Assembly (NCBI GenBank): GCA_904063045.1 | Contig: CAJFCJ010000012.1 | Location: 1,922,001 to 1,986,000 of the forward strand | Length of the DNA stretch: 64,000 bases | Source of the DNA: Dimorphilus gyrociliatus | Lineage: Eukaryota > Animalia > Annelida | Reading direction: 5' to 3' | In this document: positions 53,015 to 64,000 of the stretch, in pieces | How positions within the stretch are numbered: the stretch's first letter is position 1 | Layout: each line of letters starts with the position of its first letter | Notes under the pieces: model-generated | Told to the model about the DNA's origin: nothing | The model's input: the letters and a program-made list of their open reading frames with translations, nothing else | The model's database searches: none | Translations under genes and position numbers: made by a program

Positions 53015-56000
53015 ATGGTCAAGGAACAGTATAGAGAGGCCGATTTGGCCAGAGAAATGTAAGTAATTTGTATATGTTTAAGGATACAGTGAAAAATTCA
53101 CTTTTATTAAATTTAAATTTCATGTTTCGTTGAGCTCATTTTTTTCGTAACTTTGTAGAAGTCAATTGACTTTTGGGGTTCTCAGTTCGAAGGAAATAAG
53201 ACAGCAAGGACAAGTTCAAGTTGTTGCAAAAAATCTTTATACTCAAGATGGTATACATCAACCACATCCCTATGGTGTTCTCGATAGACAAATGGGTGTC
53301 TGCGGAAAGGCTGACAAATGTGCCGCTTGTCATAAAGATGTATTCGCGTGTACTGGGCATTTTGGTTATATTGATTTAGAGCTGCCTTGCTTTCACATTG
53401 GCCATTTTAGAAATGTTATTACAATTTTACAAACAATTTGTAAAACGTGCAGTCATGTACTATTACCTCCTCCCGAAAAAAAGAAATGGATAAGCGTGAT
53501 AAATCGACCAAATCTACCATATCTGCAAAAAAAGACGTTGAGAAAGAAGATAAGCGAACAAGCCAAGAAAATTTCGGTCTGTCCTTATTGTTCTGCGGTC
53601 AATGGAGTTGTTAAAAAGTGTGGACTTCTTAAAATTTCGCACGAACCTCATCGAGCCTTAGGTAAAAAGAAACTTGAATCGGTTATGGAAGAAAGAATCA
53701 TTGAATTTCAATCGGCTATCGATTCAAATGCCGAATTAAAGGGTCTTCTAAAAAATGGTCATCCATCAATAATTCTAAATCCAATGATAGTTTTGGAGTT
53801 ATTTAAGAGAATACCTCGAGAAGATATTGGTTTATTGATGATGTCTTCGGCGTCAGGAACACCTGAAGATATAATATTAACAAGAATTCCTGTACCACCT
53901 GTTTGTATAAGGCCATCTGTAGTTTCGGATGTTAAAGGTGGTACAACAGAAGATGATATAACAATGAAACTATCCGAAATTATATTCTTGAATGATGTTA
54001 TCTGTAAACATCGAGCGACAGGTGCAAAGATGCACATGATGATGGAAGATTGGGACTTTTTACAACTGCAGGTAACACAAAATATATTAACATACTAAAT
54101 ACAAATTAATATACATTCGAAGATAACTTTTCTGAATAGGTTGCACTCTTAATAAATTCTGAAACAACCGGTGTTCCACCTCATATGCAACCGAAAAAAC
54201 CTCTCAGAGGCTTGTGCCAGAGATTAAAAGGCAAACAAGGTAGATTCAGAGGAAATCTTTCTGGAAAACGAGTTGATTTTTCCAGTAGAACTGTAATATC
54301 ACCCGATCCTAATATGAGAATAAATCAAGTTGCCATTCCTATACACGTTGCAAAAATCTTAACATTTCCGGAGAGAGTAACACCGCATAATATTAAACTA
54401 ATGAAACAATTAATTAAAAATGGCTGTGATGTTCACCCAGGAGCAAACTTTGTTCAATTTCGTTCAGGTGGTAGGAAATTTTTAAAATTTGGTAACAGAA
54501 CGATGATTGCCCGTGATATACGACCTGGCGATGTCATAGAACGTCATTTGGCAGACGGAGACGTCGTCTTATTTAATAGACAGCCGTCGCTTCATAAATT
54601 GTCGATTCAGGCTTTCAGAGCAAGAGTAATGCCTCATAGAACATTCCGGTTTAATGAATGTTGTTGCACACCGTTTAACGCTGATTTTGATGGAGACGAA
54701 ATGAATATTCATCTTCCACAGACAATTGAGGCTAAAGCAGAAGCTTTAACCCTTATGGCTTCAACTAAAAATATTATTACACCTAGGAATGGAGAGCCTC
54801 TTATTGCCGCTATTCAAGATTTTATAACAGCCTCATTTCTATTAACCAAGAAAGACGAATTTTTTACCAAAGCTAAAGCTTGTCAGTTAATTTCATCAAT
54901 TCTTACGGAGGATGACTCTACAACAAAAATCGACTTACCTACTCCAGCGATAATAAAACCCGTCCAGGTTTTTACATTCATTCCCTTCTCTCTTTATTAA
55001 TAATTGAATAAAACTATTAATAAAATTTCATATTAATAATGATAAATTATTACAGATGTGGAGTGGTAAACAAATTTTCTCACTAGTCTTGAGACCTTCC
55101 AAGGCGCATGGGCAAATAAATATAAGAACAAAGGGCAAGAACTATTCAAAAGATGAAGAACTGTGCTGTAATGACTCCTACGTGGTTATTTATAATTCTC
55201 AACTGCTTGCTGGGGCCATGGACAAAACTACTTTGGGATCAAACTCGAAAAATAATGTTTTCTACGTTTTATTGCGAGATTATGGTGAAGATATGGCAGC
55301 AGCCGCCTTATCTAGATTAGCCCGTATTGCTCCAGCTTATCTCTCACACAGAGGGTTTTCAATAGGAATAGGTGACGTCACACCTGGAAAAACCCTTGTT
55401 GACGCTAAGGTTAAACTAGTCGATAAGGGATATGCTCTCTGTGAGGATTATATTAAGTCTTTGAATGAAGGCAATTTAGCTACTCAGCCTGGATGCACAT
55501 TAGAAGAGACTCTAGAATCATTAATATTAAGGGAACTTTCGCAAATTCGAGAAGAAGCGGGTAAAGCCTGTCTACGAAATTTGCATTCGTCAAATTCTCC
55601 CTTGACTATGGCTATTTGCGGCTCTAAGGGTTCTTTCATTAATATTTCTCAGATGATTGCCTGTGTCGGACAACAAGCCATCAGCGGGAAAAGACCGTAC
55701 GATGGTTTTGAACAGCGTTCTCTACCACACTTTCCACGGCTCTCCAAAAAACCAGCCGCTAAGGGATTTGTTAGAAACTCGTTTTATTCTGGTCTTACAC
55801 CAACTGAATTTTTTTTCCATACAATGGCTGGCCGTGAAGGTCTGGTCGATACAGCTGTTAAGACTGCTGAAACTGGCTATATGCAAAGAAGACTAGTAAA
55901 GTCTCTTGAAGACGTTTGTTGCCATTACGACGGAACCGTTAGAGATGCTAACAAAGCGGTTGTCCAATTTGTGTACGGGGAAGATGGACTCGATCCCACA

Positions 56001-57407
56001 CTAATGGAAGGTGATGAAAGACCCATTAATTTTGAGAGAATGCTTAGAAATGTCAGAAATAGAACTCCAAATTTGAAGGAAGACTCCTTGACTGGGGATG
56101 AAATACGTAGTAGAGTAAAAGCTTTGTTAAGCAAAGATATGTCTCGAGATTTTCAAAAAGAAGTAAATAACTTTTTTGAAACTATAGCCACTAAAGTTGA
56201 TGTAAAATACAAGAAATTTTCAATGTCAGCACCACCTACAGGCGTTCATCGTTTTATTGAACGTCTGACTGAGTCACACGTAAATGATCTCGTTGATATC
56301 TTCAGTAAAAAATATACAAATGCGGCTATGGAACCAGGAACTGCTGTTGGTGCTCTGTGTGCACAATCTATTGGAGAGCCTGGAACTCAAATGACTTTAA
56401 AAACTTTTCACTTTGCTGGTGTAGCTTCTATGAATATTACTCAAGGTGTACCCAGGATAAAGGAAATTATAAATGCCGCTAAAGCTATTTCAACGCCAAT
56501 CATTACTGCACCGTTAATAAAGCATGACGCAGACTATGCTAGATTAGTGAAAGGTAGGATTGAACAGACGAAACTCGGTGAAATTTGTGAATATTTAGAA
56601 GAAGTTTACCTTCCCGATGATGTTTTCTTACTAATCAAATTAGCTTCGAAGAGAATTAAAGTCTTGCGGCTTGAAACTGACGCTCATGGTATAGTTGATT
56701 CAATTTTGGCTGCTAAGAAATTAAAGTTAAAACCTGGTCAGATTAGAGTTTTCAACGAAAATTTCATAGCCATTTATGTAGCAGACAAGACGAATATTCA
56801 TTTCACCTTAAGAAACTTGAAAACAGCCATACCTAAAGTTGTTGTTAAAGGTCTATCTTCAGTAAGCAGAGCGGTAATTCATAAAGATGAAACTCCTACT
56901 GTAACTCATAAGCTATTCGTTGAAGGCGGAGATTTGCTCTCGGTTATGTCTACAATAGGGGTTGAGGGTAAAAATACAACATCAAATAATATTATTGACG
57001 TGGAAAAGACTTTAGGCATTGAAGCAGCCCGTGTTACAATTATGAAAGAAATAGATTCAACTATGAAAAGTCACTCAATGTCTGTTGATATGAGACATAT
57101 TCGTTTATTAGCGGATTTGATGACATGTAAAGGGCATGTTCTAGGTATAACGAGACATGGTTTAGCAAAGATGAAAGAGAGTGTCCTAATGTTAGCATCT
57201 TTTGAGAAAACGACGGATCACCTATTCGAAGCCGCTTACCATGGACAAACGGATGAAATTTGCGGCGTAAGTGAGTGTATTATCATGGGAAAGCCAATGC
57301 AAGTTGGCACAGGAATGTTTAAACTGGTACATAAAGTTGTAAAGGAAGACGTAAAGATAAAGTCTACTATATTTGATAAGCCAAATTTAGAAAAATTCAT
57401 TAATTGA
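53015..57407 (+). CDS. POLR3A: RNA polymerase III largest subunit (RPC1), 1378 aa
   Basis: Exons 53015-53058, 53159-54071, 54140-54967 and 55056-57407. It starts MVKEQYRE, contains [21 protein letters not shown] and the catalytic [10 protein letters not shown], and has no CTD heptads. Confidence 0.97.
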
Positions 57408-57677: not shown

Positions 57678-59299
57678 TTATAAAATCTGACATGATTGAC
57701 TTTTATGATAATCTGATGAGGAATAACTTGGAGGAGGCATAAGAAAACCAGGTGGAGGATCTGCAACAGGGCCGTCGAAATAAACTCTTACATGTAAAAC
57801 TTTACGTTTACAGTTGTCATCGGACATGATGTGAGTATTGGAATTTTCTTCTAAAGCTATTGTTTCTACATTAATAATCTTGACATGCGAGTTATAGTTA
57901 ACAAATGGAATAACTTCTCTGTACCATAATTTATCCAATGACTCGCATATCCTCGGAGTCTCCGAACTATCTGGCCTTACTATTCCAGGAAAGAAGCACT
58001 TAAATGTTAATTTGATTGGATATATAGAGAGACTAGGTGTTTTTATCGTATAATATACTCGAAGAATACGAAGAGATGTGCTAAAATGATAGTCTGACTT
58101 ATAGCTGCCAAGCGTTTGAGGAAAATCTATAGAAAATAATATATAGAGAATTGTATTAAAAGTATAGAAGTATCCCAACTATATTCTATCCTTATCTGTT
58201 TACCTTTTAATAATTCAACACAAAGAGTTTGAATATTAGTTATATGAATGTTTGGTCTATTAAAAATCCATTTTTGTATCCTTCCCATAACACTGGTCAT
58301 ATTTTCATATTTAGGTTTCTTCTTACTTTGTTTATTGCCAATAAATTGCGGAATAAAATCTTCTGCATCTACAAATTTGGAAAATAACGACAAAGAATGA
58401 AATTAAGAGAATAAAAAGATAATTAATAGAGGAGAAGCCTAACAGAGTTTTTGATGATTGATGTTTCCCTTTATATAAAATATTCGTAGAAAAATAACGG
58501 AACTATTATTAGAGTCTTTTGAATATTCGTAAAATCTGGAACTGTTAAGAGAAAGAACAAAACATTACTATAAACAATAGGCAGGCTTTAATATGTTATT
58601 TACCAATTCAAATCGTTCATTTTATCTTTATTAATGAATTGTAATTGTATATTTATGATAGTACCAGGAAGTGAATTTTCGTTTAAATATTGATTTAATG
58701 ATTGAAGTATTCCAGTCCAGATATTATAAAATGTGTTATCATTATCTAACATTTCATAGTTTGAGTAATTAATATGAAAATTAATAAAATCAATTTCATC
58801 TAATTCATCAGAATCGTAAATAGTTTTTGAACGAATATAAACTCTATTAATAGTATTTTATTGTTTTAGACAATATTTAATGACAACTTATTCGATTTTC
58901 TTACCTTAATCTCTTTAAAAGACAGTAATGGCATTTCGGCAGATATTCTCCGTCAATATCAAGAATATTTTCTTCGCAAGGTATAAAATGGGAATTTTGA
59001 CTTTGAGTTTTATTCTTAATGTAGGGTGTACTCAATGTTTCACAATTAATAACCCTACAATTTCTATGTTTTGACAACCATAAATTAGCTTTCTCCGTTA
59101 ATTCCCTAAAAGAAATATAGTCAATAGTAAGATTCTTTTTTGTAAAAACATACTTTATTAAGTGAAAATTAAACTACAACCTGAAATTCATACATATAAT
59201 ATTATCACCACTTCTAATTAGAGGATCAATATCTATCCTATTCAGAAGTAATACTGCAGTCTTAACAGCTTTTTCGTAACTTGGTAATTCATCTTCCAT
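57678..59299 (-). CDS. Tandem family paralog A: four-repeat protein with LPxY/PPxY motifs and CaaX (CQIL), 423 aa
   Basis: Exons 59299-59181, 59105-58905, 58843-58604, 58541-58444, 58368-58204 and 58126-57678 total 1272 nt in frame. Exon phases and the 240- and 165-nt exon lengths match paralog B. Confidence 0.8.
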
Positions 59300-60725
59300 T
59301 TTCAAAATATTATTAATTCTGTATAAATAAACAGATATATTTATACTATGATTGTTAGTTGGATTGTTGTAACTTTTGGAACTGGGGCCTAACTAACATT
59401 CAAAAAAGTAGACTTGGTTTTAATATAATAGTAAAGAAAGGGAATAAAGAAACATATTTTGCTGATTGGTCAACTATTTTTTGACTCATTTAATTTCAAA
59501 CTACGCTTGTGTTTATTGTTAAGATGATGAAAAATATGAACAAAATAAGATATAGAAAGAAGAGAGAAAGGAAGAGAGAAGTATATAATAAAGTTGAAAA
59601 AACAACGAACGAAAATGAGATGAAACATTTCAATTCTTTATTTTAATTAGCTAATTGATTTTCTCTTTCATTCATTAATGTCCTTAATACTTGTATATAT
59701 GTAAATATACAGTATATACAGTAGAAGTCTTGAATATACTGCATATGATGAATTCTTTAAGAGAAATTCTCGTATATTTTTAATACGTTAATTTCCAATC
59801 CCCTATAGTGATTTAAACTATACAAAGATCTAGGTCCATTGAACTTTAACTACTTTATCCTTTTATATGAATAGACATGTCTATTTTTGTTGCTTTTTGC
59901 AGATAGCGGCTATTAGAATGCTTGTTATAGTAGTTGTACGTAAGTATGAAAAGTTTTATTATATTTTTATATATTGACAGATTCATTCAAAACTTTCAGT
60001 TTCATAGAGCGTATTTTTACTATATTGTATATAAAGGAAAAATGATGGAGGAGAGATGGAGGGGAGGGGGGCGGAGATGAAGAAACCAATTTATTCATAA
60101 GCCGATTGGCCTACTTAGTTACATAAAAGACTTTTACAAAAAAAGAAATGATCAATAACTAATTTACCTTCAGTTGTACAATTTTTTTGCAACTATTGAT
60201 AAACAGGAATAAATTAATTTAATAAGCTTTCAGTACTTTTTAGGATTTACTTATTCGACTGGAAATTCTCTTCACATTTTAGACCGTCTTCAACGATCTT
60301 GATATTTTCTTTTCAATGGACTTAAACGTTGAATAGCTATTTAAAATGTTTTCTTCAATTTAGTATAGTAGTTATTAAAATGTTAAAGTACTAATTACTT
60401 TCTTAAGTTAAACATCTAGGTTTGAAAAGAAGAATTCCTTTACGAAGACAACATTTAAGATTTATCCTCTTAATAGAATTTTTAGTATTTAACAAAGAAG
60501 AAAAACAGCTCCTTTATTTTTAGAAAGTGAACAAATAAGGCTTATATTTTATCTATATGTATAAAGAGAAAGAGAGAGAGAGAGGGAGAAAGAATACAAA
60601 ATTGCAATAATTTTTATTCTCAAGCTATAAAAACAAAGATTATGTTAGCAGAAAAAATAACAAATACTGTTTACTTTCTCTATTTTATCTTTCATTTTCT
60701 TCATAAATAAATAATAATAGAACCT

Positions 60726-62449
60726 CTATAAGACATTACAACAACCTTCCTGCTCAAAAATAGGAGGCTCAGATTTGTGTATAAAACCAGGAGGAGGTTC
60801 GCTGACTGGTGTATCAAAATATATTCGGATACATGTGAGTATTATTTCCGGTCTCCTTTTCTTACTATAAACAGAAAGTTCCGAACTATTCGATATAAAG
60901 TAAGGTACAGTTTCAGCATTAATAATTCTTGCATTGGAATTGTAATTGAGATATGGAATTATTTCCCTTTCGAATAGTTTATCTAACGTTTCGAATTCAT
61001 GCATTCTACACGTTTTTTGAACTAATAATGCCGGTGTAAACGTCCTAGCACTAATTCCACCAATAGTTGAAAAAGATAATGGACTTTCCCCAATAATATA
61101 GTATAATCTTAATGAACTGAGAGTCTTTTCTAAGCAATATTTGCTCCTTAAATCTTCAATACTTCTTAAAGTTTCTTTCTTCATAGCTAATTTAATTGAT
61201 CAAAGAACAAAAGAATATTATCTAAGCCTATAGACTGTTTATAGTGTATATTGTACAAACCTTTTTTGAAGTCGATATTTGTTGTCTGTAAATTTAAAAC
61301 TCTTGCAGTATTGTGTTGTTCAAGCCAACGTTGAGCTCTTTCAATAAGTTCTCCAGTAGAATCGTAAACAGCTACTGGACTATTCCTTCCGTAGTTATTA
61401 TGATTCGGAAGAAATTCGATAGTACCTTTAATATTAAATGATATAAAAGGAAAATGAGAAACTAGTCAAATGAACATTTTATTTAACAAATAGTAACCTA
61501 TTTGTTCATACGTAGGTGAACCTTTCATATAGAATATCCTTAGGATTATTGAATTTTCCGAATTATCAAAGGTATTTTCATGATATCTCGATCTGTAAAG
61601 AGAAATTTAAAATGAGAATTGAGAAGAGAAGAAAGGAAAGATAATAATTAATAATAATAATAGAAAATGATAAATTACTCTTCAGGATTTTCTGGAAAGT
61701 GTTTTTTACTGTAGCCAACAGTTTCCAAATTGATAATTTTACCATTGATTGAATTTTGTAATATAAAATTATTAAATTTTCTTATTGTAGATTCGATAGG
61801 ACCGTGTTTCTGTATTGAATTTTCATTCTCTGAATCATTTAAATTGGGTACAATGTTATAGTATCCGATTTGATTAGCTTCGGAAGGGTCCGTCTCTGTC
61901 TTCGATCGAAGATACAACCTTTTCGATATTATTATCTTTAATTAATATTACTCTTTTCTTTTAGCTGTTATTAATTAATTTTACCTTAGAAACTTTATCA
62001 TATTTATTGAAAATTCAGACTCTTCTAAGATAGCCGGAGTAAGAGATGTTAATTTTGAGTCTATATAAGATTTTTCAGGATCTTTTGCTGCGCATACAGT
62101 TTCGCAATTTATAACTGCAAAGTTATTATGCTCAGACAGCCAATTATTTGCTTTATCAATTAACTTCCTGAAATAGAAAATAGTGCCACTACTATATATT
62201 AATTTAAATACATTATCAACTTGGATAATGGCCAATTTTTACTTACGAAAATGGCTCGTATCTTGTATTTGAGAATATATCATTATCCCTGATACAAACT
62301 GGTAGAAAATCCATAAAAGTAACTCTTATATTAGGTATTGAGAAAGGAATTTGATGGAGTGCAATATCATTAGCGTGTGTCCGTACAACTTCGTTGTAAC
62401 TTGGAGGTGGAAAATATTCCATAGAGGAACTTCTCGGTATAGAAAACAT
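60726..62449 (-). CDS. Tandem family paralog B: four-repeat protein with N-terminal PPSY and CaaX (CCNVL), 448 aa
   Basis: Exons 62449-62247, 62167-61985, 61918-61679, 61592-61498, 61425-61261 and 61186-60726 total 1347 nt in frame. An additional 5' exon is possible because an AG immediately precedes the ATG. Confidence 0.82.
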
Positions 62450-63106
62450 CTTCTATTATTCAAAGCTTTGGCTGAAATTCGAAAAAGAAGAACTAATTAA
62501 CAATTATTCAGTGTTTGAATGGAATTTTAACATATCATTGCCTCTTTTATTGTAGTCATTCAATTCAATAGTATATAAGTAACAATTATTACGTGCTAAT
62601 TAATTAATACTATGAGGAGAGGACATAATTTTTGGTTAACAATTATACCGATCTAGAAACAAATGCAAAGAGAAAGAAGGAGAGAAGTAAGAAGATGGAG
62701 ATGGGGAATAGGGAATCCTTAAAAATTTATCATTTAAGTCTATTAAAACTTTAATTGACAATGGTTTATATATAAGCTAATAGAAAACTGATTCATACAT
62801 TTTATAGGATAAAAAATCGTTCTTGAGTAATACTTACGATTGTAAAAAATAGAGAGACCTAGACTCATCAGCTTAGTAACATCACGTGATTGTTGTTTGG
62901 CTCCTGTTCCATGTTCGAAAAGTTACTAGTAGTACGTAATCTCTCTATTAGCTTCTTTTTTAATAAAAATTTAATAGATATATAAATTAAACAGTTAATT
63001 TATTATTTAATTTATTCATTTGAATATAAAAGCATTTAAGTAAAGGAAGTAAACCAAAAAACAAAATGGCAAGGTTTTCGTTACTCTAATGAAAGAAAAC
63101 ACAATT

Positions 63107-63974
63107 TCACAATAAACAGCACTCTTCGGCATCTTCGTAAATGCGAGGATGATTTGATAAAGGTATATAACCAGGGGGAGGTTCAGTGACAAGACCTTCA
63201 AAGAATATTCTAATACATGATATATAAGCATAGACTTCTGAATCCCCAGTGTAGCTTTGCATATCGTCGACTTTGGCTTTATATAAATAAGGTAAGGTTT
63301 CAGCATTTATAATCTTTGCCTTGGAATTATATTGAAGAAAAGGAAATATCTCTCTTCTTAATAAACTACTCATTGTCTCGAAAGTAGGTGAGCGTCCTTT
63401 TGCAGTTCTCGATTGTAATGCAGGTAGAAATGTTCTGCAGCTAATTGTAAAATCAGGTCTGGGTTCAGCATCAAAAGTACGAGTAAAGTATATTCTTATA
63501 AATCGAACATATGGCTTCAATGTATATTTAGTTCTAAAATATCCAGGATCGTAGGCTACATCTTCTCTTTTAGCTATGTTTATCATTAATGAATATTCAT
63601 ATAAATATTACAGTATACTGTAATATAAATTATTTACATACCTTTATTAAAGCTAACTTGAATGGTTTGTAAATTCAATATATTTATAAAAGAATTTGTT
63701 CTAACCCATGTTTGAATTCGAGACATTAAAGAGGTAAATGATTCATGCTTTCTGAAGTAAAAGCATGAACTATTCTGTATAACTGCTGGAATAAAGTCGG
63801 CGTTTTCTTTTCGTATGAAAAAAATAATATGATTTTTCAAATTTATTCTCTTTTAGTGAAATAAATACTCAACCAATTGGAATTCTAGGATCAGCCGATT
63901 GTCCTCTTATGTAATAGACCATCGTACATAAAGGAACGTGAAAGATTTTATCAGAATCTTCGTATTGCTTTAAT
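63107..63974 (-). CDS. Tandem family paralog C (5' end outside the window) ending in PPGY...CCLL
   Basis: Exons 63974-63874, 63806-63642 (165 nt) and 63573-63107 are homologous to the last three exons of A and B. Confidence 0.8.
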
Positions 63975-64000
63975 CTGGTAATATTTAGAAAGTAGATAAG

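What the first reader, a model, noticed from the sequence alone, without database searches (positions are those of the whole stretch)
57678..63974. Tandem array of an uncharacterised four-repeat protein family with WW-binding PY motifs and geranylgeranylation boxes
Seen: three same-strand paralogs share exon phases (2,2,2,1,1) and exon lengths (240 and 165 nt) despite low sequence identity. Each complete protein has four copies of a ~90-aa alpha/beta unit: [F/Y]xP...E.F..L..(R/K)A..WL....(I/V)(I/L)N(C/V/L/A)(E/Q)T...(L/I)R(I/L)(Y/F)(F/Y). All three end with PPPG followed by a CaaX with X=L (A: SCQIL; B: GCCNVL; C: ECCLL). They carry L/PPxY motifs (A: LPSY and PPSY; B: PPSY; C: PPGY). Known: CaaL directs geranylgeranylation, an adjacent Cys can be palmitoylated (as in RhoB CCKVL), and PPxY/LPxY motifs bind WW domains of NEDD4-family E3 ligases. 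Inference: a previously undescribed family of lipid-anchored adaptors that recruit NEDD4-type ligases (or ESCRT budding) to membranes through a novel repeat domain, diversifying by tandem duplication. The ORF track shows only scattered fragments.
Basis: partly seen in the sequence, partly recalled or inferred. Interest (0 to 1): 0.85.

Follow-up and report, generated by a model that had tools for sequence, protein, structure and literature searches.

The report
Prenylated four-repeat PY-motif gene array
Three neighbouring, transcribed genes of the small annelid Dimorphilus gyrociliatus belong to an unstudied invertebrate protein family with four copies of a small domain, a lipid-anchor signal at the tail and often a ubiquitin-ligase docking motif at the head; its only known look-alike is the vertebrate membrane-raft protein Raftlin.

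Summary
Genes A (57678-59299), B (60726-62449) and C (63107 to beyond the window) lie on the minus strand. They share six coding exons, intron phases 2,2,2,1,1 and exon lengths of 240 and 165 nt. One spliced transcript contig confirms every intron of B.

The genome is Dimorphilus gyrociliatus, and A is the annotated DgyrCDS9047. The array holds at least nine paralogues that form one fast-evolving clade.

The family is real and old. It occurs in annelids, molluscs, nemerteans, a brachiopod, a bryozoan, a flatworm, chelicerates, an ostracod, a centipede, tardigrades, hemichordates and amphioxus. No vertebrate member was seen. Every member is named "uncharacterized", none has a Pfam domain, and no paper was found.

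The four repeats are homologous to each other (hhalign 98.5-99.7%). AlphaFold packs them into one compact body (pLDDT 86, pTM 0.88) with no PDB match.

The CaaX box is the family's hallmark: 86 of 110 sequences have it, and a2 is always I, L or V. The N-terminal PPxY is ancestral but occurs in only about 40% of full-length members.

The one outside match is Raftlin (TM 0.50 over 291 residues), by structure only.

The NEDD4-adaptor function remains an inference.

The parts
57678..59299 (-). Gene A = DgyrCDS9047 (423 aa). Six coding exons: 59181-59299, 58905-59105, 58604-58843, 58444-58541, 58204-58368, 57678-58126 (including the stop).
   Evidence: P0001 is identical to this model. Introns are GT..AG. 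Introns 1 and 4 are seen as RNA joints, and the last exon plus 3'UTR is covered by a contig.
59276..59287 (-). Gene A N-terminal LPSY (residues 5-8), in a flexible tail.
   Evidence: Read from the sequence. Mean pLDDT of residues 1-10 is 49.
57765..58016 (-). Gene A repeat 4 (residues 312-395), lying wholly inside the last exon.
   Evidence: Single-repeat AlphaFold model with pLDDT 86.4 and beta-alpha-beta-beta topology. Repeats are homologous to each other by hhalign.
57681..57734 (-). Gene A C-terminal tail: PPSY (57723-57734) and the CaaX box CQIL (57681-57692).
   Evidence: Read from the sequence. pLDDT of the tail is 53-56.
60617..62471 (-). Gene B (448 aa; CDS 60726-62449). Coding exons: 62247-62449, 61985-62167, 61679-61918, 61498-61592, 61261-61425, 60726-61186. 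The 3'UTR reaches at least 60617.
   Evidence: One 1509-nt spliced contig with no mismatch. Introns are GT..AG. The annotated product is 448 aa.
62838..62867 (-). Gene B 5'UTR exon, separated from the ATG exon by a 366-nt intron (62472-62837).
   Evidence: RNA joint 62471 to 62838 with CT..AC ends. The intron reads GTAAGT..TTTCAG.
62396..62407 (-). Gene B N-terminal PPSY (residues 15-18).
   Evidence: Read from the sequence.
60729..60743 (-). Gene B C-terminal C-CNVL: a CaaX box with X = L and an adjacent upstream Cys.
   Evidence: Read from the sequence. The transcript contig runs through it.
63107..64000 (-). Gene C (450 aa; 3' part only). Last exon 63107-63573 (including the stop), 165-nt exon 63642-63806, and part of the next exon. 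The ATG lies about 836 nt beyond the window end.
   Evidence: The annotated gene maps to 63107-64836. A transcript contig covers 63165-63575.
63110..63178 (-). Gene C tail: PPGY (63167-63178) and the CaaX box CCLL (63110-63121).
   Evidence: Read from the sequence.

Best explanation
What is shown.
- The stretch holds the first three genes of a tandem array of at least nine genes, specific to the annelid Dimorphilus gyrociliatus.
- The genes belong to an old, invertebrate-wide and so far unstudied protein family.
- Each protein has a short flexible head that often carries PPxY.
- It then has four homologous units of about 90 aa, each a beta-alpha-beta-beta unit. The model packs them into one rigid globular body.
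- A proline-rich flexible tail of about 25-30 aa follows.
- A terminal CaaX box ends the protein.

What is inferred about the mechanism.
- The Cys is prenylated. In A, B and C this would be by geranylgeranyltransferase I, because X = L. An adjacent Cys, where present, may add palmitate.
- The lipid holds the globular body on the cytosolic face of a membrane through a long leash.
- The exposed PPxY at the other end docks WW domains of NEDD4-family ubiquitin ligases.
- The protein would then act as a peripheral-membrane adaptor or scaffold whose partners, or the protein itself, are ubiquitinated and sorted.
- The body most resembles vertebrate Raftlin, a lipid-anchored raft scaffold. I read the family as a Raftlin-like scaffold anchored from the opposite end.
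- The Dimorphilus copies diverged fast after duplication. This suggests each copy recognises a different partner.
For: Genes and transcripts.
- The gene models are real and transcribed.
- A profile of the last exons found 84 cluster representatives at E <= 1e-3 among 1.84 billion proteins.
- Named members come from many bilaterian phyla.

Repeats and fold.
- The repeats are homologous to each other at 98.5-99.7% probability.
- The full-length model has pLDDT 85.9 and pTM 0.88. Both tails have low pLDDT, so the motifs should be accessible.

CaaX box.
- The Cys is invariant in 30 full-length members and present in 86 of 110 sequences, against a 2% Cys background.
- a2 is I, L or V in all 98 CaaX-bearing sequences.
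- X = L in 38 of 86. A second Cys lies within four residues upstream in 31 of 86.

PY motif.
- The N-terminal PPSY sits in the same alignment columns in annelids, molluscs, a brachiopod, a bryozoan, a sea spider, a hemichordate and amphioxus.
- The extended consensus is PPSY-(E/N/S)-x-(V/A).

Raftlin.
- 'Raftlin family member 2' matches at TM 0.50/0.45 over 291 aligned residues spanning 12-410. The next unrelated row scores 0.27 or less by query length.
- Raftlin is a raft protein anchored by Gly2 myristate and Cys3 palmitate (bioRxiv 10.64898/2026.01.04.697584, citing Saeki 2003).
- Raftlin1 also recruits phospholipids to RORgammat (PMC10435467).

Expansion.
- The Dimorphilus paralogues form one clade with 100/99 support and long branches.
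Against: - No lipid modification, membrane location or WW binding has been measured for any member.
- PPxY is absent from the first 60 residues of 41 of 70 full-length members and from two annotated array paralogues. Adaptor function cannot be universal.
- The stretch before the CaaX box is acidic, not polybasic (median net charge -1). Only about a third of members have a second Cys. Prenyl alone gives weak membrane affinity, or affinity for internal membranes.
- Raftlin similarity rests on one borderline structural score. A second search with another member gave only TM 0.26/0.37.
- No member matches Pfam Raftlin, even at E <= 1.
- A profile-profile test against Raftlin could not be run.
Confidence: 0.55

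Rival explanations
1. The protein is a Raftlin-type membrane-domain scaffold, or a lipid-handling protein. Its PPxY marks only the protein itself for ubiquitin-dependent turnover or sorting into vesicles. It does not bring the ligase to other substrates.
For: - The whole protein resembles Raftlin in shape.
- Raftlin is enriched in extracellular vesicles through its lipid anchor and handles phospholipids.
- PY is dispensable in many family members. That fits a regulatory add-on rather than the core function.
Against: - The PY motif keeps its position and extended consensus across distant phyla. This argues for a specific partner.
- Nothing here separates self-regulation from adaptor function.
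Confidence: 0.25
2. The four-repeat body is a carrier or sensor for a small hydrophobic or other ligand, and the prenyl group only targets it to a membrane. The proline-rich motifs are linkers without binding partners.
For: - The internal 'PP[AS]YE.IG' at the linker between repeats 2 and 3 is conserved and looks structural.
Against:
Confidence: 0.1
3. The motifs are not used. These are soluble cytosolic proteins, or decaying duplicates, whose terminal Cys-x-x-X and PPxY are relics.
For: - One array paralogue outside the window (268 aa, P0012) lacks the CaaX box, and one ends in CVIT.
- Branches in the Dimorphilus clade are long.
Against: - A, B and C have intact reading frames, conserved intron phases and GT..AG introns, and they are transcribed.
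- The CaaX box is kept across several hundred million years (my estimate from the phyla involved), with strictly aliphatic a2.
Confidence: 0.05

Closest known systems
Raftlin / Raftlin-2 (RFTN1, RFTN2; Pfam PF15250)
   Same: - Both are peripheral membrane proteins held by a terminal lipid signal.
- The predicted overall shape is similar across all four repeats: TM 0.50/0.45, 291 aligned residues, rmsd 5.5.
- The ranges look complementary. The Atlas Raftlin clusters are almost all chordate, and no vertebrate was seen in this family.
   Different: - Raftlin is anchored at the N-terminus by myristate on Gly2 and palmitate on Cys3. This family has no Gly2-Cys3 and is anchored, by inference, at the C-terminus by prenyl.
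- There is no sequence match to PF15250 at E <= 1 in 49 members.
- The second structural search was weak.
- Homology is unproven.
PY-motif adaptors of NEDD4-family ligases (NDFIP1/2, Commissureless, LITAF, ARRDC proteins)
   Same: - A short (L/P)PxY sits in a flexible cytosolic tail of a membrane-associated protein.
- From memory, the motif context (L/P)PSY-(D/E)-x-A resembles the NDFIP and Commissureless motifs. This is a lead, not a test.
   Different: - Those adaptors are transmembrane, monotopic or arrestin-fold proteins.
- No Pfam family of any of them matches here.
- The membrane hold here would be a prenyl group.
- PY is missing in more than half of the full-length members.
CaaX proteins with a nearby palmitoylatable Cys (RhoB CCKVL, RalB CCLL types; from established knowledge)
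   Same: - The endings are CCNVL (gene B) and CCLL (gene C).
- X = L predicts geranylgeranylation.
- a2 is strictly aliphatic across the family.
   Different: - This is not a GTPase.
- There is no polybasic stretch; the region upstream is acidic.

Membership tests
Raftlin (PF15250) | Sequence match to the Pfam Raftlin model | tested here: not met
   No PF15250 hit at E <= 1 in 49 members. No Pfam family of any kind at E <= 0.01 or 0.001 in 14 further homologues, apart from chance hits on the unrelated P0024 and zf-CCCH_3 on the fusion P0032. No PF15250 hit on the window's exons.
Raftlin (PF15250) | N-terminal Met-Gly-Cys dual acylation signal | tested here: not met
   The N-termini of A, B, C and the homologues do not start Met-Gly-Cys. 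Raftlin's signal is as described in the paper read.
Raftlin (PF15250) | Same overall fold | tested here: inconclusive
   TM 0.50/0.45 over 291 residues with the model of A. Only TM 0.26/0.37 to a Raftlin fragment with the Atlas model of the Capitella member.
Raftlin (PF15250) | Profile-profile homology | not testable with these tools
   No tool returned a Raftlin sequence, and I did not type one from memory.
CaaX-prenylated proteins | Cys at position -4 with aliphatic a2 at the true C-terminus | tested here: met
   A ends CQIL, B CNVL, C CCLL. 86 of 110 family sequences have Cys at -4. a2 is I, L or V in all 98 CaaX-bearing sequences. The transcript uses this last exon.
CaaX-prenylated proteins | CaaX box conserved in orthologues | tested here: met
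   The Cys is invariant in 30 full-length members from many phyla.
CaaX-prenylated proteins | Isoprenoid actually attached | not testable with these tools
   This needs metabolic labelling or mass spectrometry.
PY-motif adaptors of NEDD4-family ligases | (L/P)PxY in an accessible cytosolic segment | tested here: met
   A has LPSY at residues 5-8 and PPSY at 406-409, both in low-pLDDT tails. B and C have an N-terminal PPSY.
PY-motif adaptors of NEDD4-family ligases | Motif conserved in orthologues | tested here: inconclusive
   The motif occupies the same alignment columns across seven phyla. But it occurs in only 29 of 70 full-length members.
PY-motif adaptors of NEDD4-family ligases | Binding of WW domains and ligase recruitment | not testable with these tools
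   This needs pull-down and ubiquitination assays.

The most novel reading that the evidence does not exclude
This family is the missing invertebrate counterpart of Raftlin. On this reading, an ancient four-repeat membrane-domain scaffold was originally C-terminally prenylated and carried a PPxY motif. In vertebrates it swapped its anchor to N-terminal myristate and palmitate and lost the PY motif. That would give Raftlin a domain definition, a deep evolutionary history and a testable link to NEDD4-type ubiquitination and vesicle sorting. The nine-copy expansion in the very compact Dimorphilus genome would then point to diversified partner recognition.
Probability: 0.3. Interest if true: 0.75.

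Novelty: new variant of a known kind. Interest (0 to 1): 0.6.

Why it matters
- A protein family found from flatworms and annelids to amphioxus has no name, no Pfam domain and no paper. Yet it carries two of the best-understood targeting signals in cell biology.
- That makes it easy to test. One Cys-to-Ser change and one Tyr-to-Ala change should show whether it is a lipid-anchored docking site for ubiquitin ligases.
- If the resemblance to Raftlin is true homology, it would supply the first domain architecture and the first invertebrate relatives for a protein of vertebrate immune signalling whose mechanism is still unclear.
- The tandem expansion in a genome known for its compactness is a further oddity.

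Tried and rejected
Searches that found nothing.
- Pfam on every exon and on about 60 homologues gave nothing meaningful.
- A profile of the repeat against PDB sequences gave nothing (best E 1.2).
- Foldseek on the full model found nothing in PDB (best E 0.03) or in viral structures (best E 0.019).
- The language-model look-alike search of the last exon of B gave no usable hit.

Attempts to reach Raftlin or vertebrate relatives by sequence.
- Three word-indexed searches returned only invertebrate family members.
- One call failed on a parameter limit.
- The findings search for 'raftlin' was blank.

Literature.
- Searches for six accession or locus names, and for Dimorphilus plus CaaX, found nothing.

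Readings rejected.
- Decaying duplicates: rejected because the frames are intact and the genes are transcribed.
- A viral Gag-like relative: rejected because there is no viral fold match.

Step left out.
- Window sequences were searched exon by exon, by reference.
- The only full-length Dimorphilus proteins used were database entries returned by the searches (P0001 and its paralogues).
Full report
**What is there.** The window is AT-rich eukaryotic DNA with short introns. On the minus strand between 57678 and the window end lie three genes with the same build.

Gene A has coding exons of 119, 201, 240, 98, 165 and 446 nt. Their coordinates are 59181-59299, 58905-59105, 58604-58843, 58444-58541, 58204-58368 and 57681-58126, with the stop at 57678-57680.

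Gene B has coding exons of 203, 183, 240, 95, 165 and 458 nt. Their coordinates are 62247-62449, 61985-62167, 61679-61918, 61498-61592, 61261-61425 and 60729-61186, with the stop at 60726-60728.

The cumulative lengths give intron phases 2,2,2,1,1 in both genes. Every intron is GT..AG.

Gene C shows its last exon (63110-63573) and a 165-nt exon (63642-63806) inside the window. Its start codon lies about 836 nt beyond the window end.

**Transcripts and annotation.** The only public run found for the stretch (X1, 2017) is kept as assembled contigs. These contigs lack the introns, so the run is RNA-derived.
- One 1509-nt contig without a mismatch carries all five coding introns of B. It also carries a 366-nt 5'UTR intron (62472-62837) and runs through the CaaX codons to 60617.
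- Introns 1 and 4 of A appear as joints. A 13-letter loose end at 58204 fits intron 5.
- The last exon and 3'UTR of A, and the last exon of C, are covered.
- Contigs give no strand and no usable expression level.

An exact look-up shows that A is DgyrCDS9047 (CAD5120481.1) of the annelid Dimorphilus gyrociliatus. The public assembly calls products of 423, 448 and 450 aa exactly at A, B and C.

**The array.** The locus fetched around paralogue DgyrCDS9050 shows eight family genes in 21.6 kb, in both orientations. DgyrCDS9055 lies further on, so there are at least nine. Six of the eight genes in the locus (A runs off its end) close with CaaX and X = L. One ends CVIT, and the 268-aa gene has no CaaX box. 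In a maximum-likelihood tree of 41 members, all six Dimorphilus proteins included form one clade (100/99 support). The stem is long (0.87) and the tips are long (A: 2.04 changes per column). This is a lineage-specific tandem expansion with fast divergence.

**The family.**
- A profile of the three last exons (alignment A1) was scanned against 1.84 billion cluster representatives. It found 84 proteins at E <= 1e-3, most of them 380-500 aa, often with three or four matched stretches each.
- Named members come from these groups:
  - annelids: Ridgeia, Lamellibrachia, Capitella, Owenia, Paralvinella;
  - molluscs: Haliotis, Batillaria, Ostrea, Mercenaria, Ruditapes, Mya;
  - nemerteans: Lineus, Tubulanus;
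  - the brachiopod Lingula, the bryozoan Watersipora and the flatworm Macrostomum;
  - sea spiders (Nymphon, Pycnogonum) and spiders (Oedothorax, Parasteatoda);
  - the ostracod Darwinula, and the centipede Strigamia, where the protein is fused behind a CCCH zinc-finger domain;
  - the tardigrade Paramacrobiotus;
  - hemichordates (Ptychodera, Glandiceps) and amphioxus.
- No vertebrate, insect, nematode or non-bilaterian appeared among the named hits. That is an observation, not proof of absence.
- All names are 'uncharacterized' or 'hypothetical'.
- No Pfam family matches any exon or any of about 60 homologues.
- A profile of the repeat finds no PDB sequence.
- No paper in the library contains any of six accession or locus names.

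**Repeats and fold.** In an alignment of 30 full-length members, each of four units has this pattern:
- (D/N)-F-x-P, then about 13 residues;
- F-E-x-F-x(2)-L-x(3)-A-N-x-W-L, then x(4-7)-V-x(2)-C-E-T;
- a variable loop of 25-45 residues, then L-R-x-(W/Y/F).

Profile-profile comparison of each unit against each other gives probabilities of 98.5-99.7% and E values from 1e-15 to 1e-25. The four-fold repeat is certain.

AlphaFold2 with 49 family sequences gives a confident single body for A (mean pLDDT 85.9, pTM 0.88). It has four beta-alpha-beta-beta units. Both ends are of low confidence: residues 1-10 have pLDDT 49 and the last 20 have 53-56. A single repeat folded with 106 repeat sequences gives the same unit (pLDDT 86.4).

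Nothing in PDB matches:
- Foldseek best E is 0.03.
- Viral structures give nothing.

**The one outside look-alike.** A shape search of ESM Atlas cluster representatives returned the family's own mollusc and arthropod clusters (TM 0.77 and 0.69). Next came 'Raftlin family member 2' (PF15250, chordates) at TM 0.50 by query and 0.45 by target, with 291 aligned residues spanning 12-410 and rmsd 5.5. The next unrelated row scores 0.27 or less by query length.

A second search, with the Atlas's own model of the Capitella member, listed a Raftlin fragment only weakly (TM 0.26/0.37).

By sequence there is no Raftlin signal. I could not obtain a Raftlin sequence from any tool, so the decisive profile-profile test is missing.

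Raftlin is a raft protein anchored by Gly2 myristate and Cys3 palmitate, and it is enriched in extracellular vesicles (bioRxiv 10.64898/2026.01.04.697584, citing Saeki 2003). Raftlin1 recruits phospholipids to RORgammat (PMC10435467).

From my own memory of the human sequence, Raftlin also reads as four helix-plus-strand units. That is a lead, not a test. I put true homology at a little under one half.

**The signals.**
- The CaaX box is the family's most conserved linear feature.
  - The Cys is invariant in the 30-member alignment.
  - 86 of 110 collected sequences, fragments included, have Cys at -4, against a 2% Cys background. X is L in 38, Q/S/M in 31 and I/V/F in 15.
  - a2 is I, L or V in all 98 CaaX-bearing sequences of the enlarged set.
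  - A second Cys lies within four residues upstream in 31 of 86.
  - The 15 residues before the box are acidic rather than polybasic, with a median net charge of -1.
- Before the tail, a proline-rich 'E-P-P ... L-P-P-x-P' is conserved.
- The N-terminal PPxY occupies the same alignment columns from annelids to amphioxus. Its extended consensus is PPSY-(E/N/S)-x-(V/A).
- PPxY is nonetheless found in the first 60 residues of only 29 of 70 full-length members. It is absent from the tardigrade and spider members and from the venerid-type bivalve group (Mercenaria, Ruditapes, Mya). It is also absent from two annotated array paralogues.
- A conserved internal 'PP[AS]YE.IG' sits at the linker between repeats 2 and 3 and is probably structural.

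**Reading.**
- Shown: a real, transcribed, conserved, unnamed family, with four homologous repeats forming one body. Its flexible tails carry a strictly conserved CaaX box and a frequent PPxY.
- Inferred from established knowledge of CaaX processing and WW-PPxY recognition: C-terminal prenylation tethers the body to the cytosolic face of a membrane. For A, B and C this would be geranylgeranyl, with possible palmitate in B and C. The PPxY head would engage NEDD4-family ligases.
- Because PY is dispensable in many lineages, the core function must lie in the four-repeat body. My preferred reading is therefore a Raftlin-like peripheral scaffold with a PY-dependent regulatory or adaptor arm.

**Novelty and score.** The proteins already sit in public databases as predictions, but the family, its domain and its signals are undescribed as far as these tools can tell. 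The kind of thing it is has precedents: a lipid-anchored scaffold, or a PY-bearing membrane adaptor. I therefore rate it a new variant of a known kind, with interest 0.6.

**Limits.**
- RNA evidence comes from one run and from contigs only.
- Taxon range rests on those hits that carry names.
- The exons of B and C were never joined.

Noticed in passing
window 62472-62867: Gene B has a 366-nt intron in its 5'UTR and a short upstream non-coding exon. The public CDS annotation does not show either.
   Followed up: partly
window 59705-59725 and 60653-60672: Run X1 shows a non-canonical joint (AG..GA, skipping 927 nt) with only 20 letters on each side and high depth (about 150). Long loose ends lie on both sides, in the spacer between genes A and B. 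It is probably a contig from elsewhere that shares short words with the spacer.
   Followed up: no
window 55056-57407 (+): A long open exon encodes domains 3-5 of an RNA polymerase largest subunit (Pfam E 1e-88). It is convergent with gene A, whose 3'UTR runs past 57650.
   Followed up: partly
L001 7694-9169 (-) and 5212-6924 (+): Two array paralogues outside the window depart from the rule. The 268-aa gene ends GRYSMS, with no CaaX box. The 481-aa gene has a long Pro/Ser/Thr-rich tail ending CVIT.
   Followed up: no
ESM Atlas rows: A cluster of 90-aa hypothetical proteins from Bacteroidota matches a single repeat at TM 0.67-0.70 by its own length. The unit may exist as a free-standing bacterial domain, or this may simply be a common small fold.
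   Followed up: no
P0032 (Strigamia), P0017/P0034/P0036/P0078 (unnamed assemblies): Long family members (553-1001 aa) carry N-terminal extensions. The centipede protein has a CCCH zinc-finger domain in front. One group ends 'EPPPQIFLDGE..DEDC(V/C)(I/L)L', and one of its members starts Met-Gly-Asn-Gly.
   Followed up: no
alignment A2, linker between repeats 2 and 3: An internal 'PP[AS]YE.IG' is conserved across phyla. It looks like a structural linker, so not every PPxY in these proteins should be counted as a free WW ligand.
   Followed up: partly
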